Source of the DNA: Macrostomum hystrix
Taxonomy: Eukaryota > Animalia > Platyhelminthes
DNA length: 64,000 nucleotides
Assembly: GCA_950097015.1 (NCBI GenBank)
Contig: CATNEN010000038.1
Coordinates: 28,892,001 to 28,956,000 of the forward strand
Reading direction: 5' to 3'
The translations under genes were made by a program, and so were the position numbers. The stretch's first letter is position 1. Each line of letters starts with the position of its first letter. Positions 31,596-64,000 of this stretch are shown here, one piece after another. The notes below the pieces were generated by a model that was not told the DNA's origin, searched no databases, and saw only the letters and a program-made list of their open reading frames with translations.

Positions 31596-31741
31596 CTTCT
31601 ACAATTCGTTCTATTTAGTGTCTAGTAATGTTCTAAAATTAGCTGTTAAAGTGTTCTGAAGTATTTAGGTTTTTGTAAAAATTCATTGATAAGAAAACTT
31701 CCATTCGAAGACTTTAGTTGACCTATATTTAGAAGCAACCA

Positions 31742-33686: not shown

Positions 33687-33874
33687 ACAGTTTATTTATG
33701 ACAAAATCTGTCATTTGTTTTACTGTGCTTAATGTCTTTTCTGTTTAAATGCATACCTTATTCCTTGCATCACCGTTAATCAATACTTGCTTGACTTATT
33801 TTTCATAAAATGTCTTTCGAATATTAAATCATTGATTATTTGTGACTTCTTGCCTATCAATGTAAGAAATGGAT

Positions 33875-35328: not shown

Positions 35329-36551
35329 GCAATATAAAATTCAATATTAGCAAAAAAGGTGACAGAGGGACAGAAGCGTCTCCCAGTAAAGTTTTTTGCT
35401 CACGTAGGGAAAATATACTCAAACCGATTAGATCCGGAATCCAATGTGTCTGCGAAAATATTTAGGTCCTGCTGAATGTTTGCTTGCTATATTCAACTGA
35501 GCTTTAGTAAAAAGAAACTGCTGACTTAAGCAGCGATGTAGCTTTGCTGGCTGTCTGATTCGGCAATGAATCGATACCAAAGCCAGGGCTATTGTAGCCA
35601 CCAACGCTATAACTCGTGCTAATGCTTTACTCTCCGCTTTCGACTGTCTGTCTATTTTATGATCAACAGAAATGACTAGTCTGATTGGAGACTATTATCT
35701 AGCTCAATACTAACCGCTAGAAGTTGCTGGCTGTTATTCAAAGAGATAAAGCATTAGGGTGTGCGGAATACGCAGCGTCATATTTGTGGCAGTAATCAGA
35801 TCGATTCATGGCACCATGCACGGACCTAAATCGAACCAGTCCACGACTAGGACATGATAGAGTGCCGTCTACTGGAGTCCTGTTTCCTTCAGCTTCAAAA
35901 CTGCCCTGCCATAATAGCTTTTTCTCGCAAGATCTGTTTAAAAAATGCACCTGTCAAGATTTCCGCCAGAATAGGAGACTTTTTGGTTGAGAAAAGGAAG
36001 CAATGCGGTGACTAACAGCGTGGAAACTCCGCTGAGGTGCCGTCTTTTTCCTCGGGTGGGCAGGAAGGTTTGTGGAGTGACGGCAACTCCTGACTAATTG
36101 TTCCGTCTTTTATTTTCTTTTCTGTAAAGTCTTTCCGCTGCTCGCTTTGGGCGATCAGTCGATGCTGGCAAGCAACTAACTGTGCGCCGACCATCGATTT
36201 CTCAACAGTCAGCCAACACACCAGCCAATGTTGCTATTTTGCAGAGCTGCGTCTGCTGAACTGGCATATTCTCAGTGGAGAGGGGTGTGGCTGCTTGTGT
36301 GGTGGTGCTTTAGGACTGCTGCTGCTGCTGCTGCTGCTGGTAGAGTGGCGCGGGCAGTCGAGTTTGTCAAGCCATAGGGGTGAGGAGTTGGGTGGGAGGC
36401 GGGTCTCGCGCAGGTGGTAGCGAAGCCAGCCGAGTCGGCATTTATTTCGCCACTGACAGCCTTCGAGTAGGAGCAACTCTTGCGCCAGCAGGAAGAGCAC
36501 AATTAGTTTTTTTCTTTAACTATCCTCAGCCGGAGCTTATCCTTTGCAGCC

Positions 36552-39500
36552 ATGTGTGGGGTAAGTAACATTGCCAGTCTTCATCAGTCGGATGGTCAAG
36601 CGAAGATATGAGGAAAATATGTCTCTCTCTACTTCAGATCCTAGATTTTCATTTCTTCCTTCATTTCTTCTTTCCGATACAGCTCAAAGGATTGATCCTG
36701 CTGGTGACAGTCGCTCTGGCGCTACTACTCGATGATACGGCGGCCCTATCGCCAGACAAACTATGTCCCCGAAGCTACACTGTCCGGGGAAAGTGTGTGA
36801 AAGAGCGCCGTGTGACAACCACGGTGCACTACGGCTACGACCGCACCAGAGGCACCTGCGTGCGGAGACAGTCGCGGGTCGTTAGACGCTGCGGATTCGG
36901 TAAGCCCCGTTTAATTTGAGCTGAAAATGTGTTTTTACATAGTTACTATCTAGTTATCATCAACTCATCCAGACTCCGAAAGCGCCTGCCGATGCTACAT
37001 CAGCGGAGATCCGCACTACGTCACCTACGACGGCCAGAACATGCACTTCTTTGGCAAGTGCACCTATGTTCTGACTCAGCCGGTGCACGGTGCCAGCAAT
37101 GGCTGCCGGTGGAGCGTGCTCGGTAAGAACCGCATGCGCGGTGGAAGCCCCTACACCTACCTAGAGGAGGTGATCGTTAACATCAACGGGAAGGCCCACC
37201 GGCTGACCCAGAAGCGGCGCCTCTACATTGGCAAGGTGTTCCGCGGGTTGCCTTACCACGCCCACAAGCCTGACGTCATGGTGCAGTACATGGGCAACAA
37301 GATCGTGCTCCATTCTCGCCAGTGCGGCTTCCGAGTCTCCTTTGACGGCGATGCCGAGGCTATTATCAAGGTGAAGCCGAAGTACCGCGGCCGCCTATCT
37401 GGTATCTGCGGCAACTGCGACGGAAAACGCAACGACCTACGGTGAGTTTGACATTTAAAGTAGAAAGACCACACTAGTTTTTCACCTGGCGGGCATTTCG
37501 AATTAACACTGCCTTCTTCACGATACCTTCCAAACTGAATGACCGATTTTCGTGAAAGTCCACCTTTGGATCAAACTTTTTCGTTATTTTCGATTAACTA
37601 ATTTTCAAAGCCGTCTGAAATCATCGTCGAGATATTCAGCCATTCTTGTCAAAGACCCCGCTGACAATGGTAACTACAAAATATTAAAAATGATAGCCGA
37701 CATCTAAACGTACCTATTTAACATGGTTGCATGATAAAGTTTCTAGACTTTCTTGGCGATGGGTAGAATATTTTATGAGATCAAATAAAAAGATTTTTTT
37801 GTATTTTAATAACCCATGGTTTTTCTAGAATTAAGTCATCTAAATTTTTTATGGCTCTCACACCGTATCTGCTTGTCCCCAATAATCTGCAGCACCGCTT
37901 CGGGTCGCAACGTCAGTGGACTAAAGAACAAGTTCACACTGATTGGCAACTCTTACCTGGCACCCGGCACCCTGAAGTCGTGCAGCGGCCCGAACTCGGT
38001 GCGTTGCAGCTCCAGCCAGATCGCCAAGGCCAAGAAGGCCTGTGAGAAGCTGAACGGCTCCGCCTCACCATTCCGTCAGTGCATGAAGAAGGGTGACATC
38101 AACCTAAAGAGATACTACGTGTGAGTCTAACAAATGATCAAATTTAAATACTATTACTATTTGCAATGGGGCTTTGTGTTATGGAAGGTTTATCGAATGT
38201 CAAAGTTAGTGTCAATAGCCTAATTTTTGCTTAATTTCTTACTATTAATTCAATGCAATTGCCGTCATTACCTGAAGGCAATCACTACAAAGTGAAATTT
38301 TAGGCAATGTCCCATCATTTACTAACTGATGGCAATTCTGCCCATTAAGTTGCATCCTTAGCACCAGCGCACACGGATACCGTACTTGGGCACATACTCA
38401 CAAATGTGTGCAAATCTGCCCTGACTTTCTCATCGTCAGACAATTTACACCCTCGCTATACATTTGATGGTGGACCCTCAAAGGGGCAAATTGCACTAAA
38501 ATTAATGAAGCCTTGCCGCAGAATTGAACTCAGGGCCTTGGTGTGGGGTGCAAGCGCATTTGGCACTCTAGTCACCCACTAAGAGCAAGTGATATTTGTA
38601 AAAAATGTTTTGCAAGAATTTTGAGAGAGAGCTTTTTGTGGTTCAGTGATGGTGTTTACTGTTGATTGGCGACTGGCGAAGCGTTGAAGTGTCCAAGGCC
38701 TCATTGATTCGGGGTACAGACACGGAGAGAAGGTTTAGGGGCTTTGAGTGCATTTTAGTCCAATTTGATTGATCCCACAAGCCTTCGAATCTGTACGCCT
38801 GTGTGTAGTCAGGGAGTCAGGGGAATGAGCAGAATTGCCTTCTCGCTGGCTGCGGGTCGAGTGCTGCCGACAGCCGCCTCTGTGGTACTTCCCTCCCTGC
38901 AATAATGATTATACTTTACTGTCGTATCTTTTGTCTTTGTTCAGTGACTGCGTGCAGGACATGTGCGCCGCGTCGCGCTTCTCTCGCAAGGCCCTGATCC
39001 ACGAGGCCCGCTGTCAGAGCTACGCTGCCGCGGCTGAGATCTGCGCCAGTAGGGGCTACGCCAGCCGCAACTGGCGCAGCATCGCCAACTGTCCGCTGCG
39101 CTGTCCGACCGGTATGCGCTACGAGGCCAACAGGAAGACCTGCCAGAAGACCTGCGAGAGCCTGTTCTTCGGCATCAACTCGTGTCCGCGAATGCGCAGC
39201 GAAGGCTGCTTCTGTAAGCCCGGCCTGGTGCTCGACGGCAACCTCTGCGTGAAGAAAGAGGACTGCCGCTGTTTGCGTAAGTTTAAAATTGTTTAATCAT
39301 TTTAATATAATGCTCTGCATCCAAGTCACTCTCACTAATTGAATATTAGGACTAGTAATTGTGAGGGGGGTCGGTGGTATAGCGGTTGACGCGTTTGCCT
39401 CTCGCTCCAATGTCCCTACCTTCGATTCCACGGCGAGGCCACATTCATTTGGGGCGCAGCCGCGGAGAGAATGCTTGGGGGCTTGTGCAATTTACGCCCT

Positions 39501-42500
39501 TGAGGGCCAACCAAGGTACAGTGAGAGTGTGCACTGCCTGACGATGAGAAAGTCAGGGCAGATGTACACACCTGTGTGAGCGTGTGCCTGCGTACAGTAT
39601 TTGTGTGCGTGTGTGCTCATTAGTCAGCGAAATGGGCAGAATTGCCTCCTCGCTGGCTGCGGGTCTTGTGTCACCAAATGATGTGCCTTCGCCCGCAGCT
39701 GTCCAGAAATTATTATTATTGTTTTATTAATTCTTAGAGATTGAATTTAGACTGACGAAAAAGTAAAAATGTAGAAGACTGGACTATTTAAATCCTTCTG
39801 AAACAAATTGTCTCCATATATGAGCTAAATAGCAAAGCATCAAAAAACGCCTGTGCGTTCTAAAAGTGTTTGGAGAGTATGTATGACAAAAACTTATCGC
39901 GTTCTGACAGTGCATGGTTCGAGCCCTAGTTCGGGCTTCAGTTGTGGTTTTAAGCGCTAAGCTGAAATACAAGAGAAATGAGAATTGAGAATAATGAATG
40001 ATTCCCATCTGTTTCCTGTTCCTAATTGCAGAGTGCGCCGATCTTCGCAGCCCATCCGACTGCGCCGCCTGGAAGCTCAAAGGCCGATGCGCCAGCGAAC
40101 CGGAAGTGATGTACAAGTACTGCCGACTTACCTGCAACATGTGCGAGAAGCGTAAGTTTTAGTGGAGCAGTTTCACAGTTTCTGTTGGTGCAATCTTGTT
40201 TTTGATGACTTTTTTTAATAATATTTGAGACGCATTTTCAGGCAAGTGCGTTGATCTGATTGCGACTAACATCTGTCTGGAGAAGAAGCGAGCAGGAAAG
40301 TGTACAGATAGCTTCTACAAAGAGTTCTGCGGACTCACCTGTCACTGGAAGTCGTGCCAATGCCCGGATGAGGGCAGCCACTACGAGAGGGGCCGCTGCG
40401 AGTCGCCGCGAATGGTCCGCAAGGTCACGAAGACCACCGTCTTCAGGTCCGTTGTGACCGGAGTCTGCACCAAGTCCTCCCTATTCTATTATGAGCCTTG
40501 TGGAGGTAAGACGAATACTAAATTTGTTGTGCTGCTCACAAGATTTTAGCTAGTAGGCTTGCAAATGAAGTCTTACTTGGTTATAATCGTTTTTGCTAAG
40601 AGTTAATCAGTTCTTATTTTAAATTCTAGATTGCGAGGTGATCAACAAGGTCATACAAAAGAAGCCGTGTGACTACTGCGCCAACCAGAGAGTGATGGCC
40701 AAGATTGTGCAGCACCGCGAAGGAATCTACTGCACGCGACGGGAGAAAGAGTTCACCAAAAACTGCAAATGTCGATTCCGCAACGGCAAGGTGAAATACT
40801 TGCGCTCAATCAAATGCCGAAATCACGACACCTTGATCTACGTCTACTACGAGAAGCGCATCAGCAAGGACTGCAAGCGCTGTCGAGTTATCAAAATCAA
40901 CAAGGTCAAGAAAGTGGTCTGCAAGTCTCCGCCACCTGTCTACAACCCGCCAGAGAAATGTCCTACAGGTCGGAACCCTGATGCAACATACACTCGGACC
41001 ATCTGTCGCAAAGTGGCTATCAAGTGCCGCTGCGATACGAAGTGCATCAGCAAGAGCTTCAACTGCGGTTGCGATTGCCTGCAGCCAGTCGGTCAGGGCG
41101 ACTGCGAAATATCGCGCAAATGCGACCGAGTTAATAAGCGCCTTTTGATTCGCTATCGTGCAGAGCTACTCATCAAGGACAAGCATGGCGACGGCGTCTG
41201 CACTAAACGGTCTGCCATCGTTCATGTCGAGAAGAGGCGTAAGTTTGTCTACTAAAAATTGAAATGCATTGAAGTTTGATTTCAGCGTTCTTTTGTTGAT
41301 ATAAAAAGCAACGAAATCGGGAAACAGTTTACTAGGCTCAAATAAGAAATTATTCTCGACATTGCGCCACATTTGCAGCCTGCAACTACAAGCGAATCGG
41401 CTACTACACCTGCGACAAGGACAAGGCCGGCAGAATTGTCGGCTGCCCGACTACCAGGCGCAAGAACTGGCCACCCCGCTGGTATAACTACAAGGAGGGC
41501 TACCTAGACGACAGTTGTAACTGCAAGATTAAGAAGGCCAAGAAGGTCTACCAGGATAACTTCTGCTGCTGCCCGAAGCCCTACGTAATTCGAGAGCCAA
41601 ACGAAGAATACGGCACTGGCAAGTGCGAGAAGGCTGACTCACACTACCGCATGTTAGTTGTGGGCATCTCGTACGTACACAACCCTGACACCGGCGAATG
41701 CGTCGAGGAGAAAAAAGAATGGTGGGAGGTCTGTCGCTGCGACTCTCCACTGAAAAGAGAGGTCTGCATCAACCGGCCAACCTACGGCCTGTTGGTGAAG
41801 CACAAGCCCTATTGCAAACTTGTTGACGCTAATAGCAAGAATGCACGCTGCGAATGCGGAGAGACCCTTACATCCCGCAAGATTGTCTGTCGGAAGGCGC
41901 CGCGATTCCTCGATCGCAAGAGCAAGTGTGACATCCAACGGGGACGCGCTGTCTATCGCCGAGTGTACAAGGAGGTTACTTATCGAAGAAAATGTGACTG
42001 CCGAACTCGAGTAGAACCATTGCTGGAGCCCTGCCGAGAGTGCATACCGAAAGTGAAGAAGGAAGTGATTCCCTGCCCCAAGAACTGCGACAACAAGATG
42101 GGACGCTGCTCGGTGAACTGCAAGAAGTACTTTGTCACTTACTGGTACACGTGGAACGAAATTAGCAAGACTTGCGTGCCCAGCGAGGTCAATCGAATCG
42201 CTTCTCGATGCTGCTGCAAGCCATACTTCAGGTATGAATGGTTGGGCGTCAAGGTTTCTCAACAAAGCTTCAATGTTCAATTTTATATTCATTCGTTCTA
42301 AAAAATAGCACGGAGCCATTTTTCTGAACACAATCAGGTCTTAATATCGACTGCAGACCTAGCGTTTACAACAGGCAGTTGAGGCGGAGCTAAAATTTTA
42401 GCACGGGGCATTATATGGAGGTTTCGAATTCTCGAAAAGGGTCCCTACCTTTGAAGGGGTACTAAAGTGCAATCTACGAATATTAAAACCGCCACAATAG

Positions 42501-45500
42501 ATTCGGGGACACCAAGTTTGGAACTTTGTAATAGTCAGCTACGCCACTGAAACAGAATACCTCACAATTGACTGTGATAATTAGGTTTTAATTAGGAGTA
42601 CGCAGAATTTCCTTAGATGTTCCCAAACCTTGTATTCTACGAGTATTTGGTGCTTTAAATTTGATCCTTACTTGTTGAAATTTAATCTTGGTCTAACGCA
42701 AAGCTTTTACGATTCCTCGTAACAGGCCACCAGATGGACCCGGCACGGATGAGAAGCAGGAAAAGGGACCAGTTTGCGATGAATCTGGCACTCGGTTTAA
42801 ATATTATATTAACAGACAGCGGCTGTGCGGTAAGCATCCATACAAGAAGTGCTGTCGAAGAACCGACAAGCGATACGTACCGATTCCTTGCAAGGTTGGC
42901 AAGCGCAAGAGAGCAGTCCGCTGCGCTGATGGCAAAAATATCAAGCAATTCGTGATTACCAAATACGAACTGACGAAGTGCAAGTGCAAAAAGCGCGAGC
43001 GAATCGTGCCGTGCAAGTGCCGCTGCCCGAAATCTAAGTCCATTGTGAAATGCGAGAAAGATACAAACACCTGGGTGCACATGCAGATCCACTATGTTAT
43101 CCGACACTGCCGGTGCCATAGACAGGTAACTAAACAACGACGTCGCATTCCCTGCGAGGAGACGCCTAGGCGAGAGGTGTTCAACAACTACGACGTCTGC
43201 ATGGCGGGCAAGACTTCGGGCTGGATGTTTACCCGCAAATTCAGCAGATTCTATATGAGAGACTGCGTCTGCAAGGAGCAGAAACTAGAGAAGATCAGAT
43301 GCCACTGTAGTAGGTCAAAATATTGCTTACTTTCTTGTTAAACGTGTACTCTATACATTTTTTGCATCCTTGAATACGTTTCAGAGTGCCCTAAGAAGAC
43401 CACAAGAACACCTGAGCGATGCAACGGTATGACTGGCTACCTGCACTGGACCGTGACCAAGCAGAAGAAATCTGGCTGCCTTTGCAAGCCTAAGACTTAC
43501 AAGAGGAAGAGAGAGTTTAGTAAGTGATAAAAACTTTTGTCAAAAAGCATGAACTGCGAGATTTCAGTCTAATGTCATTCTATAGACTGGGGGTGGGCTA
43601 ACACACCCACTTAAGTCATCGTACCTGTTTTACAGCTCGGTGAACTAAAGCAATCAGGAATTAATTTTGTAGCTCAATTGGCCGAATCGCTTCACTTTAG
43701 GCGGGTTTCCAACTCCTCATCTCTCGTTCAAAAGTCCGAAGCTCTCAATCAGACCTTCTTGATCCCAATAGAGTTTGTAAAAAGTGCTCTTATGACGGTG
43801 CTAAGAATAATTGAGGGGCTTCCATGGCGAGCGCCACCGCGGGTGGGTTTTGACTCCTCGTGCGGGGTTTGAAAGTGCCAAATAGGATTTCAATGGAGAG
43901 AGTTGGCCTCCGATTTCGGGACTTTATTGTTGTTCATGCTGGTTTTTTCTTTTATACATAAAAAATACACCTCGTGAAAATATAAAAGCGTAGTCAGTCT
44001 ACATAGTCGTAGATTATAATGACTACTACAAATTTTCTAAATTCTCCACACACTCCAGCTTGCCCAACACAGAAAGACCGCGTTGAAGTGAAGTGCAGCG
44101 AGAAGACAGGCGTGCGAGTCACCACACAGTACAACTTCCGCCGAATCGACGGCTCCTGCCGATGCGGTTGGGTGAAGGTCGATGAGCGCCAGGATCGATG
44201 CAGTGCGTAGTGCTAATTGTCTTTTTTCTTACCATTGTCAGCCATCTCCGTTATCTAACAATATTTTAAAGTACAATTTCCTCAAATAAATTACAGACTG
44301 CGATCTGGAAAACTTGAGGGTCCAAAAAGTCAACAAGCACAATGAGAAGCATCCAGCATGTTTGCGCAATCATTGGCACTACGAAACATTCGAGTATTAC
44401 CTCACTATCCGCGATGGTATCTCCATCTGCATGCAGCGAGCCATCACTGGTCGTCGCGATGTGCCGTGCAACAGGGATGAAAGCACATTGCCTGTTGGCC
44501 GTTGCAACACTCGAACCAGACGTCAGCGCTACCAGAAGATCTGGTTCGAGCTTCGTGCCTGTCGCTGCACCAAGCGGTCCAGCTACTACTTCAAGCCATG
44601 CGGTTGTCCTAAGGACCGGCCGCATAAGCGAAGAAAGGTTGATCACGAGTGCGACAAGCGTGGCAACTGGATTCTCACCTGGGAGTTCTACAGGTGGAAC
44701 GAGCTTTCGCAGGTGTGCGAAAGATTCGAAGAGAAGCAGACGCGCCCTGTGGCCTGCAAGCCGGAAAAGAAGCAGGTGTCTAAGACTGATTGCTACAAGG
44801 GACACTACCAGGTGACCGTGCACACCAGCAAGGTTGTGGAAGAAACTTGTTTCTGCAAGCCGAATAAGAAGATCACTGTGCTACCCTGCGGTAAGTATGC
44901 TTTTCGGAAGAGCCAAGTGGGGCTCTTGATTTGATAAGAAAAGCATAGCTACTGAGCGGGCGGTAGGGCGCCCTGTCTCCCGCTCCAAAGTCTCTGGGCT
45001 TGAATCCTGGGCAAGCTGGCAATAATTTAGGGCGCAGCCGCCTAGAACACGCTTGGAGGCTGGTCGTGCAGGACCAGAGCAAGTATTTTAGGACCAAACC
45101 CCCAAAATGGTACACATTTATGTAAAAGAGTGTTTGTAGTACAAAATCTTGAGCTTTAGTTTTAAATGCAATCGACAGTTTTTTTCTAATTATGAAAACA
45201 ACGCCCGCCCTTTTTAGTGTGCCCGACTATCACTCGAACTGGTAAAGAGTGCCTTGAGGATAGAAAGACTAAGCACTCGTACCGCACTATCACTACCATT
45301 ATTCGAAAGTGGAACGACAGGAAGGAGCGATGTGAAGTTGGCAGCACAATCGTTGAGAAGCGCATATGCAGTAAGTTTTTTATATTATTTTTACGATGTT
45401 GTACTCACGACTCCTAGGACGGGTGCGCCTACGAGGGTCAGAGTACACGGGGCCGTGCTGGCCTGCGTCAGGGCGCGAGTGTCCGCACCGGACCCTAAGT

Positions 45501-54500: not shown

Positions 54501-57500
54501 CCACTAACTGGTGAGCAGCTACACCTGAAAGAAATTACTCGCCTTGTAAAGTGCAAATGTAAGACGAAAACGAAAACCAAGCGATGCGACTGTACACCTT
54601 GCAAGAAGACACGAACCTTTAATAGATGCATTAAAATGCCCATGCGCTGGCAGAAGACTACAGTGTCCTACACTCACAATGGCTGCAGGTGCATCAGAAA
54701 TATCAGGCGTGAGAACATACCCATTCCATGCAGCAACAGAAAGTACATAAAGAAGAGCGGCAAATGCATCAAGCAGAAGGCCGGTGGTGGAGTTGTCGGA
54801 TTCAGAAAAGTGGTCAAATGCAGAAAGAATATCTTTAACTGCGAGTGCACGGAAGTATGCAAGAAAGAGTCTGAGGTGTGCTATTGCAAAGGCATTAGCA
54901 AGACTACAAAGTGTGTGCAACATAATACCTATGTTACAACAACCATGCGTTGGGCAATTGACAGGACCGCAAACAGTTGCGTTTGGAGGGAAGAAAGCGT
55001 CAAGCGCAGAGTTGTCAAGCCTTGCCGAAAGGATAAGATTGAAAGAACTGGCTGCGTTTACAAATCGAAAACCGGCGGTGAGAACTATCGCATTGTGAAG
55101 ACCACCGCTTATCGACACCACATGTGCAAATGCGTTAACGAGCCTACAGTGGTTGTACGAGAAACTTGCGACTGCGATCACCGTTGGATTGTTATCAAGC
55201 GAAAGAATTACGGACCTAGAGGCGACTGCAAACGTGAGTACACACTTCGCCGTTATGTCAACAAAGTTGAGAATGGCAAGGTCCGCTGCGTTGAAGATAC
55301 TCGAATCGAGTCGGACAAGCATTGCTGCAGAAAGTCTAGCAAGTCAAGGTTCTGCGACAAGCAGCAGTGTGTTTACGTCAACTTGATCACCAGCTACGTT
55401 CTGACTGGAAGCTACAGAAAACGATTCTGTCAGAAGGCCGAAGATAGGACTATTGACGAGCCTCCATGCGTTAGAAACAAAAATATCAAGCGCGTCAGGA
55501 TCGACCGCTCGTCTTGCGCTAAAAACAATCACATGCGAATTTCTTACCAAAAGCAGGTTTGCCGCGACTGCAAATGCGCTTACGTTGAATACAGATTCGA
55601 GAAGCGAGTTTGCAGGTGCAACTACGTATACAAGAAGTGCACGTGCGCTCGAAATGGCAAAAAGCAGAAGTGCGTGCACATTTATGAGCGCATGTCCGCC
55701 GACAGAAAGGAATGCATCCGAGTGAAGAACTCCTACCAAGTTCCGGTGGCTTGCGGAAAGCGACCGAGGGACATTCGCGTGTGCAATTTGGTACGGAAGA
55801 CCAAAAATGGCTATATTGACAAGTACTATACGATTAAAAAATACTTCCGAAAGTGGGTCTTCAACAAGAAGAAAGGAACTTGCAGGTGTATCTGGAAGCC
55901 AGTTGTGGATACAAACAGGCTGTGCAAGTGCCAGCCATACAGGAGCGAAAAACCCTACGACTACTTTGAGTTTAGACGGCGTTGCGACAGGAAAACCAAC
56001 ACATACATCGTGCTCTACAAGAAGCGAGTGCGCCGAGACAACGGCTGCGTGGAGCTAATTAGAGAAAAGAAAATCGCAGTGCAGTGTCACATTAGATCAT
56101 CTTGGAGGCAGGCTCCGGACCCGCCTTGTCCAGCAAACCGAAACTACATCCGGCGAGTTTTCGAGAAAGGAATCAAGCGAAACTGCAAGTGCGAGGTCAA
56201 AAAACGGTACAAGGCCTGCAAATGTAGGTGCCCTAATCCGACTTTAAGACAGGTGTGCTACAAGGATGCTATCTTGGCCATTTCCAAGTCCTACAAGCTT
56301 GTGAACTGTGTCTGTATACCGATTGTTAAGCGTCACCTAAGAAAGCTAAGCTGTCCAAAGGATTCCTTTAGTGTGGAGAAGGCCAACTCACCCAAGTGTA
56401 CAGAAACACGTGTGAGGATTATATTCAAAAAGACTGCATGCACTAGGTGCACCAAGAAGGTGGAGAGAACTGTCGATCACTGGTGCTGCCCCGCGCTGCC
56501 GCCGAATATGAGAGAGAAGGTCGAGTGCGACAGCGAAAATGCTATCAAAATAACGAGAAGATTTAACTACGTTCTGCAGGGTAGAGTTCATCCCAACAGG
56601 GAGTGCAAGATGACAGAGACTAAAGAAACTCAATCTATTTTCTGCGACAACCTCAGCCGACCGGAGAAGGTAGTTAGCTCTTGCCAGAAGAGAGATGGCT
56701 TTTTGGACCGAGTGCGAAAGGTTCGCTACTACACCGTCGAGTTCAATGGCGAAGGATGCAACTGTGTATGGTCACGTCACTACAGATGGGATGTTTGCAA
56801 CTGTCGACCTGATCGAGTTGTTGAATCAGTCTGCAATCACGAAACCTGTCAGCAGGAAATTCTTCATTATTCGTATAGAATGAGGAAGGATTATCGAGGT
56901 AGAAATGTATGCAAGGAGTCAATTAGAAAGACCCAGGTGCGATGCGGATGCTGCAAGAAAGACTATTCCGAAGGTCCGAAATGCGACGGAGTGCGAACAC
57001 TGCGCAAGACTTACTATACGTACAGGTGGAACTTCAAGACCAAAGCGTGTATCAAGCATCGTAGAGACGACGACAAGGTAGTCGAGTGCGGCGAGAAAAA
57101 CGTCATTTTGACGTCTCGACCTGACAGAGCTACTTGTCAGTACACTATAACTCACCTCAGAAATTTTGTGAAGGCTTGCGTTTGCTATAAGAAGCTTGTA
57201 TCTAAGAAGCCATGCTATTTCTGCTGCCGACCAAGAAAGGTAAGAACGGTACGGTGCCTAAAGCACCGCATCATTGAGACCACAGTCTCAACGCGAGTTC
57301 CTGTTGGCTGTAAGTGCCGCAAGGCCAAGACCAGAAAGTCGCTGAAGATTGTGAAATGCCGCCGAAAGTTTGTTACTAAATGCTACAGTCGCAATCCGCT
57401 GACTTGCAAGCAAAAGTGCTGCCAGTTTAAGTGCACCGTCCGAGACTGTAAGACGGTAAGACCACTAATTAGAGTTAAGTGCTGGCATCGGGTGTACAAG

Positions 57501-60500
57501 TGCTGCAGCACAGGCGTCTCTCGTATTAGAAGTTGCGACGACAAGCGCAGAAAGCATGTCTTTGCCACCACCTGGCACGTTTGGCGACCGTGGCGATGCG
57601 ACGTGCACAAAAAGACCAGAGAGGAAGCCGTCGTATGCAACTGGCGCTTGACAATCGACCGTGGCGTCTGCAACATCATGGGCAAAAAGTCTGGACGTCT
57701 TCAGGAGGTGCAGCGAAAGGACATTCTCAGGCGGGAGGTGTACGCTGGCGGATGTAAGTGCAGAGAGATTAAGAAGGTAGAGCTAAGAACCTGCTCCTGC
57801 GAAGGATACCATGACGAGACAGTGTGCACTGAAAATACACTTATCAAATTCCGCTGGTCCTGGGTCCTCAAAGAAAAGAGAAACGGAAAAGCTTACTGCT
57901 CACCAGTGAAGACAGTGATATCTAGCCAAGGAACCAAATGTAAGAAGCCGCACTACAGAAAGATTGGTAAATGCAAGGAGAATGGTATGCAGACGGTGCA
58001 ACTGGTGACTGAGTATGCTGACCGATGTGACTGCCAGAAGGACTATACCCAGTTCGAAATGGTTTGCCGATGCCCCAAGCCAGAGAAGGACAGGCGCTGC
58101 GATTACGAAAGAGGAAAAGTCATTACAACGGTCAAGACTTTCGTTAAAGTGTGTCGCAGCGAACATTCTTGTCATTGCAAGAGCTCGAAGCAGAAAATCG
58201 TCCGAGTCATCAAGTGTCCCAAGAAAAAACGAACCTGCCGTAAAGGCCTGGTTGTTACAATCACACACAAACGCAGAGGATGCAACTGCGTCGTAAGTTG
58301 TACTTTATTACTTTTTTTTCAAAGAAATCAAAAACGTGCGTTGTTACGTGACCAATGGCCTTTAACCTAATCCCTTTTAGACCCGACGAACAGAAAAATC
58401 GGTACCGTCATGCACGGCATGTACCGACATTGTTGACGGTTGCCAGGAACAGAAGCGCAGAGGCTTTTGTGAAACCAATAAGGAGACACAGGAAACCTGC
58501 AAGGAGACTTGCGGTTTTTGCAAGGTGAAGAAGTGTCCCAAACCTAAGATCGTACAGTTCAAACCGAAACGCGGAATCAGCATTAAGTCGGACCGGCGAT
58601 TCAATAAGAAGTTCTACATCAGAACCCTGGAGAACAGAAAGGAGTCTGCCTGCATCAGAGCTTGCAAAGATTCTCCTAACTGCAGATCATTTGACTACGA
58701 CCTACGGTCAAGACGCTGCGTTCTGAATAGGGTTAGAATGGACGACATTGAGACACGTGGCTACACCTGGGACGTCAGAGAGCAGCGATCGCGCTACAAC
58801 GTACACTACAATAGGATCTGTCAGGATGAGTGCGAGTGCAAAGTGAAGCCCATGAACCAAGGAAAGTGCATCTGCCGAGGCACCGGTGTTGAGCGCTGGT
58901 GCGCCAGACGATTCGCCATCATGCAATACCACGAGACCGACGATGGAAGGTGCGTGCTAGGCGAAGACTCCAGATACGTCGTTGCCGACTGCGACGAAAC
59001 CTGCGTTGATGTCGGCAAAGACTGCGCCAAGAACAAGCATATGTGCGGCCGAGACGTTGTATTCAGCAGACGGTGCGATCGCACCTGCCGCAAAGTTTGC
59101 CGCTGCGGTGAGGATCGCAAGCAGCACTTCAAAGGACTCTGCACCCAACGGGAGGACGGAAAGTGGACGTACTATCAAAGAATTGTTCGCTACCATCGCA
59201 CATCATGTGGACTTTGCGAGATGATCGTTGAAGAGTCTTACGAAACATGCACGCCGGGTGAGTTTTCTGCTGATTTTGGTTTGATGTTCTGATTTTTTAA
59301 TTTATTTCACTTAATATGGGAATTTTTCGATTTAAATCTATTTTCTAGAACCATGCGATGAGAAGGAAATCAAGGTTGTTGGTGACTGCATCAAGGGAGT
59401 TAAGCTCATTTCCATCTACTCGAGAAAGCGCCAGAGAGATGGAAGCTGTCCAGTCACATTGGTTCGCGTGGTCAAGGAAGACTGTACGAAGTGCTGCAAA
59501 GAAATCATGAAGGATGTCGGACGATGCCAGCGATACAGAAACAAAGGTGGTTACTACAGACCAGTCACGCACTCTTGGTACGTCAAGCGCAAAGGAATCT
59601 GCGAACTGAAAATGGAAGTCCGCTGGTTCCCTTGTAGCAAAGTTGGTAAGTCGGAAAAATGTTATGAACATGCATTCGTGATGTTTTTTACACACTTTTC
59701 GTTACTATGCTGCAGCCAGAAAAACGCTATTTGACATTCTTAACTTTTTGACTGAGCGGTTGACGCCCAAAATTAATATCAAAATCTAGAAAATTTAGCA
59801 GTCAGGTTATCAGTCAATTCAGTATGTTTCATAGATCGATTAACATTTAAGATTTACTCTCTAATAGTAGTTAAATTAAATAAAAAATACGAAAAACGAA
59901 TTGGTTTTTCAGCTTGCCCGCGCGACTTCACCACAAACGGCAAGTGTGAGTTTGGTCGCCGTCTAACCTACAACATCTTCTACACCGTGGATGCCGAGCG
60001 AAACTGCGTCAGGCACGCCAAGGCGTACAAGACCTACTGCAAGCAGAAGATCCGTCCTGAATGCAGCGACGCCTACATCGACCTTCTGTCTCCGCGCCAG
60101 TGTCTGCATCTTAAAAAGAAGGGCATGTGCATGAGAAACGAGGGCGCCAGTTTGTGTGCCAGAACTTGCAACTTCTGTGTTGTGAAGAAGTTCTGCACAA
60201 AGAAAATGGGCCCAGTCGACCTAGTTCTCATTGTCGACGCGTCTAGCTCAATTGAGCTCGTAACATTTGAGAATTACGTTGTGCCGTTCCTTCGATCTGT
60301 CGTCGGAAAGATGGGTCGAACAGTTAGAGTGTCCGTCATCCAATATGGCTCTACACCAAAGACTGTGTTTAGGCTTGGAGAAGAGGTTTATCCACGCAAC
60401 ATGATGTCCAGAATCAACCATATGGACATGAGTGGCGGCTCCACATCCACTGCAAAGGCCTTGTACGCAGCCTCAGAAGAGTTCAGACTACGAGGCAGGC

Positions 60501-63500
60501 GTGCAGCTCACAAGGTGTCAATCCTGGTCACTGACGGCAGAAACAGCGGCAAGATGCTGATTAAGCCTGCCGTTAAACGATTGAAGCGCTACGCTGATAC
60601 TTCCATTGTTGTCGGCATCGGACGCGATGTTAGCGAAAACGAGATGCGCCTCATCGCTTCAGACTACGCATCAGATGAAGTCAGACTGTCAAACTTCAGA
60701 CAGCTGGTGAGCATTGTAGACAAAGTCGTGAGAAAAATCTGTCCAAAGGGTGGTAAGCCAGTCAGACCTAAGCCTGGCCCAGGACCAAAACCAAAGCCCG
60801 GACCAGGTCCACGACCGGGTCCGAAGCCTGTACCGAAGCCGGGACCAGGACCCAGGCCCGGACCTCAGCCGACTGTTCCAGGCTACGGAACCGATCTGTA
60901 CTTCGTTGTGGACTCGAGTAGCTCTGTGAGTGCAGATGAGTTCAACTTGATCAAGCAGTTCATCAAGTCATACGTTAGCTCTATTGTCATCTCACCTGAG
61001 GATACTCGCGTTAGCATAATCCAGTACTGGGATAAGGTAACAACAACTGTTGATATTGAAGAGTATAAGACAGTGACTGATCTGCTCCCAGCAATCGAAA
61101 ATCTGAAGTATTTCGATGGTCAAAGAACTGTCCTAGGAGATGCTCTGGAAATAACATCTCAGCTAATTGCTAGAAATGAAAGGAATGTTCCCAAGGTCGT
61201 CATCGTTATTTCTGGATCACCGCCCACAAATGGTCAAGCAATCAAGGAGGCCGCACCAAAGCTTATCTACTATGCCGACAAAGTTATTACAATTGGTGTC
61301 AAGGGTCGCATGCCTAAGACAGAGCTGCTTCTCATCTCAAGCACTCCGCAGGACACAATCATCATTGAAGAATTCATTAAGCTTCACGACACAATCCCAG
61401 TCCTCATTGAAAAGACTAAAATCAGAGAAAGAAAGAAGAGACCGGCTCCAAGCGGAACCGGACAGGACATTGTGTTCATTGTTGACAGCAGTGACTCTAT
61501 TGGTGAAGAAAACTGGAATGTTTACATCAAGGGCTTGCTCAAAGTTATCACAGAATACGTGATTGTGTCACCATCGGACACCAGGTTTGCACTAATCCAA
61601 TTTTCAAAGCCAGCTCAGGTTGTTTTTGGCTTCAATGAATACACTGACGGCGAGAGTCTCAGGCGAGCGATCAACAAGCTGAAACCTTACCATAGAAGTA
61701 CTTATCCATCAATAGGAAATGCCTTGAAGGTCGCAGTCGATTATGTGAGAACAAAGAAGCGATCTGGTGTGCCTACATCAGCCATTATCATCACGGCGAG
61801 CACTTCTTCGCCAAGAGTTGGAATTCCAGTAGAAGAAGTAATTACGGAAGTTCACGAGGTGTTCGACTATGTCATCCCAGTGGCTATTAGAAACCGAGTG
61901 GATATGCCTGACCTGGAAAAGTTGGCCAAGCCGGATACTTCCATGATCATTACGACAGAAGAACTGGACGAGTTGATTCCGTTGTCGAAGAGAATTATTT
62001 CGCTAACAACTGTTCGTTTGAGGCGACAGCCAGTTGTCTGCAGAAAGAGAAGTCGCGGAGATTTTGTTTTCGTAATTGGAGTTGGCTCTAGAACAGCTAA
62101 GCACCGCAACTTTGAGAAGATCAAATACTTTATAAAGAAGATTGCATCGGAATACGCGATCGACGAGGGTGCATCCAGAGGTGGTGTTTTCATTTTGGGA
62201 TCAAGCTCACACAAGGCCGTCGGCCTAAACACATTTAGAAGTGACATTGACTTTAAAGCCAGCATAGACAGACTGTCGACGCCCAGGTCGCGCACAGCTC
62301 ACTTCAGATCCGGAATGGAAAAGATTGTTCGCTACGTTAGACGAAGCCGCACTAAGAAGAGACCAACAACGATGATTTATATCTCGGATGGTACTGAGAT
62401 GACACAGAATGTATATTCTGTGGCTCCAAAGATTGCATCGTCGATCCGTAAAACAATCGTCGTCGGTCTAAAACCGTCTATAAAGAATAGAGCATTGCTA
62501 AGAACAATGGTCACTGATGTTCGTCACGATTTCGTGAATGTAAAGCGGTTCCGAGACTTGTCTCGTATTGCTGGAACCATCGCTAGCATGACTTGCACAA
62601 AGACAGGAAAGGTAACAAAAGTTCAGAAGCAAGAACCTGGTGTAGAAAAAATCGTCCTTAGAGAAAGCAAGCGAACCATTACGAGAACTAATTCTGAAAA
62701 GCGAAAGAAGACAAAAACAATTAAGCAAATAATTAAAAGGAGACCCAGAAAGACCAAGCGAACTGTAACAGTCAAGATCGAGGGACAAGGTGGCAAGCGG
62801 TATAAGCGACTTATTGAGAAGGCCAAGATGCAGATCAAGAAGAACAGACGAAAGTTGAAGAAGAAGATTTCTGTTGTCTACAGCACAACAATTATTCGAG
62901 GCACTCGACATAGGTTCATAAAGAAAATAAGATTCGGCACGAGATGGTTCAAGACGCGAGTAATTCGAGTTGTGAGAGGATTCGGAAAAAGGCGACGTGC
63001 GCGAAGGTATCTACAGATCAGATACAAGAAGCAGTGGATTCGATTCAACTTAAAGCGACGAAAGGTACAATTCAGGCGCCGATGGTACAAAATCCGAGTG
63101 CATCGTCGGAAACTACTGCTTAAGTTAAGAAGACGATGGAGAGTGCTTAAAACACGACTAGGAAAGGTGTTTGTGACAATCAAAGGAAAAAGACGTATTC
63201 TCAACCCCAAACGTCACTTAAAACGACGCCGTGTGCAGCGGCAGCGTATTACTGTTCGATACACAACAAAGGTAATCAAAAACAAAAAGATCCTAATTCC
63301 GTCAAAGGTCAAGCTCGGGTATAAAATATTGCCCATAAAGGTTGTTCGCAAAAAGTTTGGAAAGAACAAGGGAAAGAAATTCAACACATTGATTCGCATA
63401 GGTCGCCGTTGGGTGCGCTTTAGCGCTAAACGAAGACGTGTGAAGATTGGAAGAGGATGGTTCCGAGTCACCTATAGAAAGAACGGCGCCGGAGTTGTGC

Positions 63501-64000
63501 ATCGCAGGAGATGGTATAAAATAAGAGTTACCAAAGAAGGATTTAAAGTACGAGTAGCAAGAAGGTGGCGTCGCCTTATTACAACCAAGCGAAAACTGTT
63601 TATTCAGCATCGAGGAAAAATAACAAGGGTAGGAAAGCCACTTGTCGTGAGATCATTGCATGGGAAGTTCAAATATTCACGACGAAAATTTAAAAAGCCA
63701 ATTCACAAAAAGCGTTATAATAGAAAAAGAAAAACTCATCGACGTCAAAGAAACAATACAAAGACAAGCATTGTGAAAGTGAAGGGACCTGCCCCGATCC
63801 GCATTCGATTCACGACTAGAAAGATCCGTGGAAAGACTGTCCGCGTTCCCAAGAGAATCCGACTGGGCAGGAAGGTCGTCCGAGTCAAAGTACAGCCTCG
63901 AGTGCTCGTGAGACGAGGCAAGCGAATCACTCGAGTCCGAGTTTTGGTTCGGGTACAGAAGCGCTGGCGCAGGTTCAGTGTTCGTCGCAGGAAGATCAGG
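36552..64000 (+). CDS. Giant secreted Cys/Lys/Arg-rich multidomain protein (SP, VWD-C8-TIL, ShKT, ~100 Cys-rich modules, PAN, 4x VWA, K/R-rich tail), at least 6,888 aa, 3'-incomplete; candidate adhesive or structural secretion
   Basis: 28 exons with GT-AG ends and one continuous frame: 36552-36560, 36683-36899, 36973-37441, 37893-38120, 38945-39276, 40032-40151, 40242-40505, 40630-41238, 41379-42231, 42726-43309, 43385-43519, 44059-44202, 44297-44890, 45218-45370, 46257-46397, 46511-47656, 48115-48402, 48494-49108, 49191-49610, 49725-50513, 50596-50727, 50815-51954, 52034-52186, 52301-52744, 52870-58292, 58381-59257, 59349-59645, 59913->64000 (sum 20,664 nt). Signal peptide MCGLKGLILLVTVALALLLDDTAA. 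Confidence 0.88.
37477..37735 (+). mobile_element. Interspersed repeat family C copy in giant-gene intron 3
   Basis: CACTGCCTTC...CCAAACTGAATGACCGATTTTCGTGAAAG...CATCGTCGAGATATTCAGCCATTCTTGTCAAAGACCCC is shared with the 17165 and 20150 copies. Confidence 0.7.
38325..38905. mobile_element. Two old, oppositely oriented family-B SINE relics (about 38325-38580 minus, 38660-38905 plus)
   Basis: Degenerate matches such as TCTGCCCTGACTTTCTCATCGTCAG and GAGCAGAATTGCCTTCTCGCTGGCTGCGGGTC. Confidence 0.65.
39365..39720 (+). mobile_element. SINE family B, full length
   Basis: tRNA head, conserved body and (ATT)n tail. Confidence 0.9.
40032..40350 (+). other. Two ShKT domains of the giant protein (exons 6-7)
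   Basis: CADLRSPSDCAAWKLKGRCASEPEVMYKYCRLTCNMC and CVDLIATNICLEKKRAGKCTDSFYKEFCGLTCHWKSC fit the six-Cys ShKT pattern. Confidence 0.85.
45397..46133 (-). mobile_element. Solo LTR of an LTR retrotransposon (737 bp) in giant-gene intron 14
   Basis: TGT...ACA termini; perfect 5-bp TSD TACGA at 45392-45396 and 46134-46138; GC-rich; CCAAT (46001), TTTAAA TATA-like box (45919) and minus-strand AATAAA (45812-45807) in promoter-to-polyA order on the minus strand. Confidence 0.85.
47681..48043 (+). mobile_element. SINE family B, full length, in giant-gene intron 16
   Basis: Perfect 14-bp TSD TATGGTTATAATAA at 47667-47680 and 48044-48057; A/B boxes; (ATT)n tail. Confidence 0.92.
58381..59110 (+). other. 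ShKT, PAN/Apple and ShKT-like domains of the giant protein (exon 26)
   Basis: CTDIVDGCQEQKRRGFC...TCKETCGFC; ACIRACKDSPNCRSFDYDLRSRRCVLNR...HYNRIC; CVDVGKDCAKNKHMC...RCDRTCRKVC. Confidence 0.8.
60218..62596 (+). other. Four tandem VWA domains of the giant protein (starting about 60218, 60893, 61466, 62060), with a PKPGP-rich linker at 60755-60880
   Basis: Manual translation in the frame starting at 59915 gives DLVLIVDASSSI...GGSTSTAKAL...ILVTDG; DLYFVVDSSSSV; DIVFIVDSSDSI; DFVFVIGVGSR...IYISDG. Confidence 0.88.

What the first reader, a model, noticed from the sequence alone, without database searches (positions are those of the whole stretch)
36552..64000. Giant (at least 6,888 aa) secreted polycationic VWD/ShKT/PAN/VWA protein: candidate undescribed bioadhesive or secreted biomaterial
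Seen: dozens of separate ORF-track fragments splice into one 28-exon frame with a signal peptide and no stop inside the window. The order is VWD-C8-TIL, 2 ShKT, ~5,000 aa of Cys/K/R-rich modules, ShKT-PAN-ShKT, ShKT, 4 VWA, then a K/R tail. Established: VWD-C8-TIL assemblies drive disulfide polymerisation in VWF and gel-forming mucins, and flatworm temporary-adhesion proteins (Macrostomum lignano Mlig-ap1/ap2) are giant and combine VWD/C8/TIL, VWA and K/R-rich regions. Inference: this is a polymerising, strongly cationic secretion (glue, rhabdite/mucus, egg-cement or glycocalyx component). Unlike a mucin it has no PTS region, and the domain order does not match those adhesive proteins as I recall them.
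Basis: partly seen in the sequence, partly recalled or inferred. Interest (0 to 1): 0.92.

Follow-up and report, generated by a model that had tools for sequence, protein, structure and literature searches.

The report
Giant secreted polycationic flatworm protein gene
A Macrostomum-type flatworm transcribes one 32-kb gene for a secreted, strongly positively charged protein of about 8,300 residues, built mostly from about 90-100 copies of a small cysteine-rich unit found in no database; it is probably a glue-, slime- or matrix-type material, but where it is made and what it does are untested.

Summary
A 28-exon frame on the + strand runs from ATG 36552 to a TGA 4.3 kb beyond the window end.

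- **Transcript:** one spliced 20,355-nt RNA contig with no mismatches confirms seven introns. Its length fits a single mRNA from exon 2 into the K/R tail.
- **Known domains (Pfam):** VWD (with a GDPH motif), C8, TIL, three ShK (two more by Cys pattern only), PAN and four VWA.
- **Module array:** about 4,800 aa of 47-aa modules (C-x7-14-C-x16-20-C-x-C-x9-13-C, 19% identity). AlphaFold models one as a three-stranded sheet (pLDDT 92). I found no relative in Pfam, PDB, 1.84 billion representative proteins or the ESM Atlas.
- **Tail:** 1,904 aa, 38% K+R, no Asp, net +703, in near-identical 165-aa and 28-aa repeats with a beta-strand-like pattern.

The gene is not Mlig-ap1 or Mlig-ap2, and it lacks the multiple D assemblies, cystine knot and PTS region of mucins and VWF. 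Secretion is well supported. Adhesive, slime or matrix function and polymerisation remain inference.

Other first-reader notes cover this same stretch; the scan has not found it on other DNA.

The parts
36552..36560 (+). Proposed exon 1 (ATG TGT GGG), followed by a GTAAGT donor. Not covered by RNA contigs.
   Evidence: Sequence. Two alternatives exist: an in-frame ATG at 36608, or a trans-spliced leader joined at the 36682|36683 acceptor. All three give the same hydrophobic core.
36683..36899 (+). Exon 2: signal-peptide core (about 36683-36748) and the first Cys module (36764-36892).
   Evidence: RNA contigs start at 36745 and 36785, and the junction 36899|36973 is confirmed.
36973..37441 (+). 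VWD domain, with a GDPH motif at 37005-37016.
   Evidence: Pfam PF00094, 92 bits. Closest solved relatives are FCGBP, MUC5AC, MUC5B, MUC2 and VWF. Both flanking junctions are confirmed.
37893..39276 (+). Two exons (37893-38120 and 38945-39276) encoding C8 and TIL. The 824-nt intron between them is confirmed.
   Evidence: Pfam C8 29.8 bits and TIL 34.1 bits; joints.
40032..40360 (+). ShK domain (40034-40150, Pfam) and a second ShK-like six-Cys unit (40244-40360, by pattern only).
   Evidence: PF01549, 37.7 bits. The second unit gets no Pfam hit. Joints 39277|40032 and 40152|40242 are confirmed.
40361..58292 (+). Array of about 90-100 orphan 47-aa Cys/K/R modules in 19 exons, including one 5,423-nt exon (52870-58292). 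Introns are almost all phase 1 and fall one codon before the first Cys of a module.
   Evidence: AF2 pLDDT 92 with three beta strands. No Pfam, PDB, homologue or Atlas match.
58381..59257 (+). Exon holding ShK (58405-58527), PAN/Apple (58528-58827), a ShK-like unit (58996-59106) and a flanking module.
   Evidence: Pfam ShK 19.3 bits (below the 20.9 cutoff) and PAN_1 33.1 bits; Cys pattern.
59349..59645 (+). Exon with two more Cys modules.
59913..60184 (+). Start of the last exon: one module (59915-60055) and a ShK domain (60056-60184).
   Evidence: Pfam ShK 21.4 bits.
60218..62578 (+). Four VWA domains: about 60218-60724, 60893-61399, 61466-61990 and 62060-62578. A 40-aa Pro/Lys/Gly linker (60749-60880) follows VWA1. 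A complete MIDAS (DxSxS..T..D) is present in VWA1 only.
   Evidence: PF00092, 328 bits in 4 stretches. Motifs read, coordinates. Closest PDB entries are collagen VI alpha3 and mussel PTMP1.
62600..64000 (+). Cys-free K/R tail. It continues beyond the window to the stop at window coordinate 68312-68314 (L004:5312-5314), 1,904 aa in all. It holds 6 x 495-bp repeats (63767-66727), 8 x 84-bp repeats (66710-67385) and 3 x 45-bp repeats (68108-68256).
   Evidence: AF2 on one unit gives an all-beta meander with mean pLDDT 59.

Best explanation
Shown: a single 28-exon gene (about 31.8 kb, about 8,325 aa) is transcribed and spliced into one mRNA.

Strongly inferred: the product enters the secretory pathway. 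It has an N-terminal hydrophobic signal, 548 Cys in extracellular-type domains, no transmembrane run and no anchor.

Inferred mechanism:
1. The roughly 90-100 small three-stranded, disulfide-stapled modules form a long, protease-resistant, cationic rod or thread.
2. The single N-terminal VWD-C8-TIL assembly, probably self-cleaved at GD|PH as in FCGBP, gives head-to-head disulfide or non-covalent oligomers in the acidic granule.
3. PAN and the four VWA domains (MIDAS intact in VWA1) bind partner proteins or glycans.
4. The 1,904-aa tail (+703 net charge) alternates V/I/L/W with R/K in short strand-like runs. It binds and condenses polyanions such as sulfated glycans, glycocalyx, biofilm or mineral surfaces. 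It may assemble into beta-sheet once its charge is screened.

Overall this reads as a cohesive, polyanion-condensing matrix protein of a gland secretion (slime/rhabdite, adhesive or cement). It would work like the cationic cohesive proteins of flatworm glue (Mlig-ap1, ap3) without belonging to those families.
For: Gene, transcript and stop:
-.
- The share of 31-mers held by four runs (0.88) matches the exon-only prediction (0.882).

Domains.

Secretion features:
- N-terminal hydrophobic core.
- No hydrophobic run of 18 or more residues elsewhere.

Module fold: pLDDT 92, three strands.

Charge and composition.

Tail:
- All repeat periods are multiples of three (495, 84 and 45 nt), and the frame stays open for 2,845 codons.
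- Beta-type hydrophobic periodicity is z = +3.4 against shuffles, while alpha-type is z = -3.0.
- AF2 gives an all-beta meander, with pLDDT about 80 for residues 10-80.

Literature analogies:
- K/R-rich regions of Mlig-ap1 act as the heparin-sensitive cohesive part of flatworm glue (PMC6410801).
- Ap3 proteins are secreted K/R polymers (PMC9229212).
- Planarian rhabdites are built on sulfated GAGs (PMC5450325).
- GDPH in VWD domains is autocatalytically cleaved (PMC8267560 and PMC10880436).
- The second-closest solved VWA relative is the mussel byssus matrix protein PTMP1.
Against: - There is no information on cell type, localisation or phenotype.
- Published tail-specific screens in Macrostomum report only ap1 and ap2 as glue proteins, with no VWA/ShK/PAN protein. 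That argues against the adhesive organ as the site of expression.
- There is only one D assembly and no cystine knot, so mucin- or VWF-style polymerisation is not supported.
- The tail model has low confidence: the five models range from pLDDT 34 to 59.
- The many RRRR/KR runs could be convertase sites, so the mature product may be fragments.
- No orthologue was found, so conservation could not be assessed.
- Exon 1 and the junctions between 42.4 and 50 kb are not read-verified.
- The copy number of the 99%-identical repeats depends on the assembly.
Confidence: 0.55

Rival explanations
1. It is a resident extracellular-matrix, basement-membrane or apical glycocalyx scaffold, comparable in role to hemicentin, SCO-spondin or collagen VI-type VWA proteins. 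On this reading it is not a discharged gland secretion, and the cationic tail anchors it to heparan-sulfate proteoglycans.
For: - The VWA domains are closest to collagen VI alpha3.
- Giant modular VWD/VWA/PAN proteins are typical ECM components.
- The transcript is present in every listed run of one study (0.88 share in X6-X9), which fits constitutive expression.
- It was not reported among tail-specific glue genes.
Against: - There is no collagen, EGF, Ig, laminin or TSP module.
- The extreme charge (+1,540) and the recently homogenised tandem repeats are more typical of secreted biomaterials than of conserved ECM.
- No orthologue was detectable outside this taxon, whereas core ECM proteins are conserved.
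Confidence: 0.2
2. It is a polyprotein precursor. Furin-type cleavage at the many RRRR/KR sites would release cationic amphipathic peptides (for example the 8 x 28-aa units) and Cys-rich modules that act in antimicrobial or anti-predator defence in mucus.
For: - There are tandem near-identical 28-aa and 165-aa cationic units.
- ShK domains occur in toxins and in defensive mucus proteins (PMC7333891).
- The composition resembles cationic antimicrobial peptides.
Against: - There are no acidic spacers or regular dibasic-flanked units of the kind typical of peptide polyproteins.
- Basic runs lie inside the predicted strands, not between units.
- Attachment to VWD, VWA and PAN scaffolding domains is unusual for peptide precursors.
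Confidence: 0.1
3. It is the species' orthologue of a published adhesion protein (Mlig-ap1 or Mlig-ap2), and therefore already known.
For: - It shares VWD-C8-TIL, high Cys content and very long K/R-rich regions with Mlig-ap1.
Against: - Ap1 in six Macrostomum species always has a C-type lectin and 7-18 EGF domains. Ap2 has LDLa and TSP1.
- Pfam finds none of these in any exon here, and finds ShK, PAN and 4 VWA instead.
- phmmer with 1,200 aa of modules found nothing in the whole library. I did not check whether that library holds the deposited ap1 and ap2.
- The tail is V/I/W-rich and strand-like, not a G/R/K low-complexity region.
Confidence: 0.03
4. It is an artefact: several adjacent genes or a pseudogene read through by an over-fitted splice model.
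For: - Junctions between 42.4 and 50 kb and exon 1 were predicted, not seen in reads.
- The dynamic programme did invent at least three wrong features.
Against: - A 20,355-nt spliced contig with 0 mismatches matches the model's length to within a few nt.
- The 31-mer share is 0.88 observed against 0.882 predicted.
- All 27 introns are GT..AG, and 22 of 27 are phase 1 at module borders.
- There is no in-frame stop in 8,325 codons.
Confidence: 0.03

Closest known systems
Mlig-ap1, the cohesive protein of Macrostomum lignano temporary glue, and the split-off ap3 proteins of Minona and Theama
   Same: It is giant and secreted, has one VWD-C8-TIL assembly and a Cys-rich core (about 10-11% Cys), and carries thousands of residues of K/R-rich sequence with pI above 11. 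The likely mode of action, electrostatic cohesion with polyanions, is the same.
   Different: It has no C-type lectin and no EGF array. Instead it has ShK, PAN, 4 VWA and about 90-100 orphan modules. The K/R region is C-terminal only, is rich in V/I/L/W/Y and has a strand-like pattern, so it is not G/R/K(H/S) low complexity. No sequence homology was detected. Expression site is unknown.
FCGBP, gel-forming mucins (MUC2/5AC/5B) and VWF D assemblies
   Same: The VWD domain is a clear homologue (E 8e-98 summed on FCGBP, 1e-21 to 1e-26 on mucin D3). It has the GDPH self-cleavage motif and is followed by C8 and TIL.
   Different: There is a single D assembly only. It has no D1-D2 propeptide, no CTCK, no PTS or mucin domain, and only 13 N-glycosylation sequons. 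Polymer formation of the VWF or mucin type cannot be assumed.
Collagen VI alpha3 N-terminal VWA array and mussel proximal thread matrix protein 1 (PTMP1, 4cn8)
   Same: Both carry tandem VWA domains in a secreted structural protein. PTMP1 is a byssus matrix and collagen-binding protein. Identity is 21-28% (E 1e-65 and 1e-21).
   Different: There is no collagen triple helix. MIDAS is complete only in the first of the four VWA domains. The VWA array is fused to a Cys-module rod and a polycationic tail.
SCO-spondin and thrombospondin type-1 repeat arrays
   Same: Both have a VWD-C8-TIL head followed by dozens of small, elongated, three-stranded, disulfide-stapled modules encoded by phase-1 exons, forming a thread-like secreted giant.
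   Different: The modules here lack the W/R layered motif of TSR, get no Pfam TSP_1 hit and give no structural match above Z 3.8. They are strongly basic.
Designed cationic amphipathic beta-hairpin hydrogel peptides (alternating Val/Lys; cited from my own knowledge)
   Same: Both alternate hydrophobic and basic residues in short strands separated by Gly/Pro/Asn turns, which is expected to fold and assemble when the charge is screened.
   Different: This is a natural 1,900-aa tail, Arg-rich, with Trp and Tyr. Assembly behaviour is untested, and the AF2 confidence is low.

Membership tests
Gel-forming mucin / VWF-type disulfide polymer | Several N-terminal D assemblies (D1-D2-D'D3) | tested here: not met
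   Pfam on all 26 long open segments finds one VWD, one C8 and one TIL only.
Gel-forming mucin / VWF-type disulfide polymer | C-terminal cystine-knot (CTCK) dimerisation domain | tested here: not met
   There is no Cys_knot hit. The last 1,904 aa contain no Cys.
Gel-forming mucin / VWF-type disulfide polymer | Long Pro/Thr/Ser (PTS) O-glycosylated domain | tested here: not met
   The highest S+T+P content in any 60-aa window is 45%, and that window is a Pro/Lys/Gly linker. Overall composition is T 6.3%, S 5.1%, P 4.1%.
VWD domain family with GDPH autocleavage (FCGBP-like) | VWD homology with a GDPH motif in the first strand | tested here: met
   PF00094 at 92 bits, FCGBP as top PDB match, and SGDPHYVTYDG at 37002-37034.
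VWD domain family with GDPH autocleavage (FCGBP-like) | Actual Asp-Pro cleavage, with the fragments held together by disulfides | not testable with these tools
   This needs protein chemistry. It is known for FCGBP (PMC8267560 and PMC10880436).
Mlig-ap1 adhesion protein family | C-type lectin, VWD-C8-TIL and an array of calcium-binding EGF domains | tested here: not met
   VWD-C8-TIL is present, but there is no Lectin_C or EGF hit in any exon. Ap1 has 7-18 EGF domains in six species.
Mlig-ap1 adhesion protein family | Flanking G/R/K low-complexity regions at both ends, and expression in adhesive gland cells | tested here: inconclusive
   A K/R-rich region exists only at the C-terminus and has a different composition (V 13%, I 7%, G 7.5%). 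Expression site is not testable here. No direct alignment with MH586844 was possible.
Mlig-ap2 adhesion protein family | Two VWD, LDLa, 46 repeats of 221-255 aa, and C-terminal TSP1 repeats | tested here: not met
   There is one VWD and no LDLa or TSP_1 hit. The repeats are 47-aa modules.
VWA domain superfamily | VWA fold signature, and a MIDAS motif DxSxS..T..D for metal-dependent binding | tested here: met
   PF00092 at 328 bits in four stretches. By eye, VWA1 has DASSS..GGST..TDG. VWA2 and VWA3 keep DxSxS but lose the last Asp. VWA4 lacks the motif.
ShK (ShKT/SXC) domain | Six-Cys pattern matching PF01549 above the curated cutoff | tested here: met
   Two copies pass the 20.9-bit cutoff (37.7 and 21.4 bits). 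One is just below it (19.3 bits). Two more rest on Cys spacing only.
PAN/Apple domain | Match to PF00024 above the cutoff | tested here: met
   PAN_1 at 33.1 bits against a cutoff of 21.4.
Thrombospondin type-1 repeat (as a possible identity of the 47-aa module) | TSP_1 profile match or structural match to a TSR | tested here: not met
   There is no Pfam hit, no PDB profile hit, no Foldseek match at E<=0.001 (best 0.65), and a best VIA Z of 3.8 to unrelated folds.

The most novel reading that the evidence does not exclude
This would be a previously undescribed class of animal biomaterial protein. It would be a megadalton cationic thread made of about 90-100 copies of an orphan three-stranded disulfide module, capped by a self-cleaving VWD head, and ending in a natural amphipathic Arg/Val beta-strand tail that sets by salt- or polyanion-triggered beta-sheet assembly. 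In the worm it would be either the unidentified protein partner of sulfated glycans in rhabdite slime or a third, overlooked component of flatworm adhesion.
Probability: 0.25. Interest if true: 0.85.

Novelty: new variant of a known kind. Interest (0 to 1): 0.62.

Why it matters
Flatworm temporary adhesion is one of the few bioadhesive systems with a molecular model, and in macrostomids that model has only two proteins. A third giant, secreted, polycationic VWD protein, unrelated in architecture, would do one of two things. It could add a component to that system. Or it could identify the protein matrix of another secretion (slime/rhabdites or egg cement), whose protein components I could not find described in the papers searched.

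The gene also offers two sequence elements of general interest. One is an orphan 47-aa disulfide module with a confident predicted fold and no relative in 1.84 billion representative proteins. The other is a natural 1,900-residue Arg/Lys-Val/Ile strand-pattern tail that resembles designed charge-switchable hydrogel peptides.

The case also shows how such genes escape annotation, because both their size and their near-identical repeats break assemblies and gene models. No relative of the module array turned up in public protein sets, and the only relatives of the VWA part were generic VWA proteins.

Tried and rejected
Searches that found nothing useful:
- Pfam on every long open segment. Nothing turned up for the roughly 4,800-aa module array or the tail. 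A Pantoate_ligase hit on the 28-aa repeats is a repeat-summation artefact, because no single stretch passes.
- The search for homologous proteins with the 1,807-aa exon gave 0 hits.
- The same tool with the VWA part, in two length ranges, gave only collagen VI-like proteins at 21-28% identity.
- Exhaustive phmmer with 1,200 aa of modules against 1.84 billion representatives gave 0 hits.
- ESM Atlas on the modules (best 0.76) and on the tail gave no usable hit.
- Fold search of the module model gave no Foldseek match at E<=0.001 (best 0.65) and a best VIA-wide Z of 3.8, all generic beta-meanders.
- A PDB profile search with the module alignment gave 0 hits.
- A metagenome scan with the VWA region found no relative.
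- A paralogue search in the worm's own genome found none for the modules or the tail. The best VWA match was 30% identity.

Analyses that did not work out:
- An iterated module HMM shrank to a 23-residue core and recognised only about 72 units. The Cys-spacing grammar is too variable for a clean segmentation, so the module count is a range.
- The dynamic programme's first intron (36565-36755) is refuted by an RNA contig that starts at 36745.
- Its two introns inside the VWA exon were discarded because they leave the VWA frame.
- Its exon 45656-45757 was discarded because it is not module-like and because of the contig-length fit.
- ARAGORN found no tRNA in the high-depth intronic repeats.

Steps not taken:
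- Exons were searched one at a time by reference, and composition was summed exon by exon.

Full report
**What is there**

The window is G000:C38:28892001-28956000 of a 220-Mb, 42-contig animal genome. Other agents of this scan call it Macrostomum, some M. hystrix; I did not check that name.

From 36.5 kb to the window end the + strand is tiled by stop-free segments. They carry about 10% Cys and 20-27% Lys+Arg. Two are very long: 52749-58367 (1,873 codons) and 59777 to the window end. I fetched the next 30 kb of the contig. The last frame stays open for 2,845 codons and ends at a TGA at window coordinate 68312-68314 (L004:5312-5314), followed by AT-rich sequence.

**Gene model**

I ran a splice-aware dynamic programme, using codon log-odds trained on the two giant exons and GT..AG introns only. 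It finds a continuous path from the ATG at 36552 to that stop. I corrected three of its choices:
- Its first intron is contradicted by an RNA contig that starts at 36745.
- Two introns inside the VWA exon leave the frame in which Pfam sees the VWA domains.
- A 102-nt exon (45656-45757) encodes a peptide that is not module-like.

The resulting model has 28 exons, 24,978 nt and 8,325 aa. All 27 introns are GT..AG and 18 of them are 73-140 nt long. Twenty-two are phase 1, and these fall one codon before the first Cys of a module.

**RNA evidence**

- Run X6 has one contig of 20,355 nt. It lies on eight exon pieces from 36785 to 42232 with no mismatch, skipping seven GT..AG introns at the predicted positions.
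- X8, X1 and a sediment metatranscriptome (X3) show subsets of the same joints.
- On the 28-exon model a contig starting at 36785 would end at about 63802. That is where the 99%-identical 495-bp repeats begin (63767 plus one 31-mer), which is where a de Bruijn contig must break.
- Four runs of study P3 hold 0.88 of the sampled 31-mers of 50001-60000. The model predicts 0.882 for words that lie wholly in exons.

So the VWD head, the module array, the PAN exon, the VWA exon and the first 1.2 kb of the tail sit on one spliced RNA. Three things are not verified:
- Exon 1 and intron 1. An in-frame ATG at 36608, or a leader trans-spliced at 36682|36683, would give the same hydrophobic core.
- The junctions between 42.4 and 50 kb.
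- Transcription of the identical repeats themselves.

X1's exonic contigs are 99-100% identical to the window. They therefore do not show conservation in another species.

**Domains**

Searched exon by exon, Pfam finds the following:
- VWD, 92 bits.
- C8, 30 bits, and TIL, 34 bits.
- ShK at 40034 (37.7 bits), 60056 (21.4 bits) and 58405 (19.3 bits, just below the cutoff).
- PAN_1, 33 bits.
- Four VWA, 328 bits in total.

Two further ShK-like units (40244, 58996) rest on Cys spacing only.

The VWD is closest to FCGBP, MUC5AC, MUC5B, MUC2 and VWF. It carries the GDPH motif that is self-cleaved in FCGBP and other VWD domains (PMC8267560 and PMC10880436).

The VWA array is closest to collagen VI alpha3 and to the mussel byssus protein PTMP1. 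Read by eye, only VWA1 has a complete MIDAS.

There is no cystine knot, EGF, lectin, LDLa, TSP1 or collagen domain. There is also no PTS region and no hydrophobic run of 18 or more residues.

**The module array**

About 4,800 aa (40361-58292, plus a few units further on) consist of units of roughly 47 aa with the pattern C-x7-14-C-x16-20-C-x-C-x9-13-C. Six exons encode exactly one unit each. One more unit precedes the VWD.

Thirty-seven units align with a mean column identity of 19%, and only the Cys columns are conserved (A1). There are 86 long Cys-Cys gaps and about 72-105 HMM cores, so I put the copy number at about 90-100.

With A1 as its alignment, AlphaFold2 gives a three-stranded antiparallel sheet at mean pLDDT 92. 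Nothing known matches it:
- Pfam, no hit.
- A PDB profile search, no hit.
- Foldseek, no match at E<=0.001, best 0.65.
- VIA-wide, best Z of 3.8, on generic meanders.
- Word-indexed homologue search, no hit.
- Exhaustive phmmer of 1,200 aa against 1.84 billion representatives, no hit.
- ESM Atlas, best score 0.76.
- The worm's own genome, where only the gene itself matches.

A fold this small cannot be called new on these data. As a sequence family it is orphan.

**The tail**

The stretch 62600-68311 is 1,904 aa long and contains no Cys and no Asp. Its composition is R 24%, K 14%, V 13%, I 7% and E 1%, and its net charge is +703.

It is built from degenerate and then near-identical repeats: 6 x 165 aa at 99% identity, 8 x 28 aa, and 3 x 15 aa near the end. 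All repeat periods are multiples of three.

Short runs alternate V/I/L/W/Y with R/K between Gly/Pro/Asn turns. Hydrophobic periodicity at the beta angle exceeds shuffles (z = 3.4), and the alpha angle falls below them (z = -3.0).

AF2 on one unit gives an all-beta meander, but with low confidence: mean pLDDT 59, about 80 for residues 10-80, and the other four models at 34-47.

For the whole protein, net charge is about +1,540 and estimated pI is about 11.9. It has 548 Cys and only 13 N-glycosylation sequons.

**Interpretation**

A secreted, disulfide-rich, extremely cationic giant is well supported. The mechanism in the best explanation is inference from domain knowledge and from the flatworm adhesion literature. 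That mechanism has four parts:
- a rod of stapled modules;
- a self-cleaving VWD head giving limited oligomers;
- PAN and VWA domains as binding sites;
- a tail that binds and condenses polyanions and may set as beta-sheet.

In that literature, the K/R regions of Mlig-ap1 are the heparin-sensitive cohesive element (PMC6410801). Ap3 proteins are free K/R polymers (PMC9229212). Planarian rhabdites are built on sulfated GAGs (PMC5450325).

The protein is not ap1 or ap2. Those proteins, in six Macrostomum species, have lectin plus EGF, or LDLa plus TSP1, and no VWA, ShK or PAN.

Published tail-specific screens did not report such a protein. For that reason I rate a body-wide secretion or a matrix at least as likely as the adhesive organ.

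Mucin- or VWF-style polymerisation is not supported, because there is one D assembly and no CTCK.

**Surroundings**

The upstream genes are ordinary: POLD4-like at 7041, a metallopeptidase at 18601, an LRR gene on the minus strand at 23369, and a Ras-family exon at 33111-33683. Two introns of the giant gene carry a high-copy transcribed repeat.

**Limits**

- The read tools and the large protein searches were exhausted, so I could not test orthologues in other flatworms or the tissue of expression.

Noticed in passing
window 39364-39690 (intron 5) and 37530-37563 (intron 3): A high-copy transcribed repeat lies inside two introns. Contig depth there reaches thousands, against about 10-40 on the exons, with many variants and loose ends. 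ARAGORN finds no tRNA in it. It is probably a SINE-like element.
   Followed up: partly
window 37005-37016 and about 37400-37425: The VWD domain carries the GDPH self-cleavage motif. Near its end it has ICGNCDG, a CxxC, where VWD domains usually have GLCGNFNG (the usual form is from memory).
   Followed up: partly
window 28000-36000: There are strong strand-composition swings just upstream of the gene. GC skew is -0.40 at 28-30 kb and +0.57 at 34-36 kb. This probably reflects simple or satellite-like sequence.
   Followed up: no
G000:C38:28738671-28747331 (about 205 kb upstream on the same contig; L009, L010): Three minus-strand VWA-encoding open frames lie close together, 26-27% identical to this gene's VWA domains. 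This looks like a local VWA gene cluster. Other VWA loci sit on C2, C5 and C7.
   Followed up: no
window 36608-36682: An in-frame ATG at 36608 reads through the pyrimidine-rich stretch that the model treats as the 3' end of intron 1. The acceptor at 36682|36683 could alternatively take a trans-spliced leader that supplies the ATG.
   Followed up: no
whole CDS: There are only 13 N-x-S/T sequons in about 8,300 residues. A rough composition-based estimate predicts about three times as many.
   Followed up: no
window 7041-7523, 18601-19164, 23369-23914 (-), 33111-33686: The neighbouring genes are ordinary: a DNA polymerase delta subunit 4-like gene, a putative metallopeptidase, an LRR protein and a Ras-family GTPase exon.
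   Followed up: partly
run X3 (sediment metatranscriptome): Spliced contigs of this gene, mostly 99-100% identical, occur in an environmental sediment RNA library. The animal, or a very close relative, was therefore present and expressing the gene in that sample.
   Followed up: no
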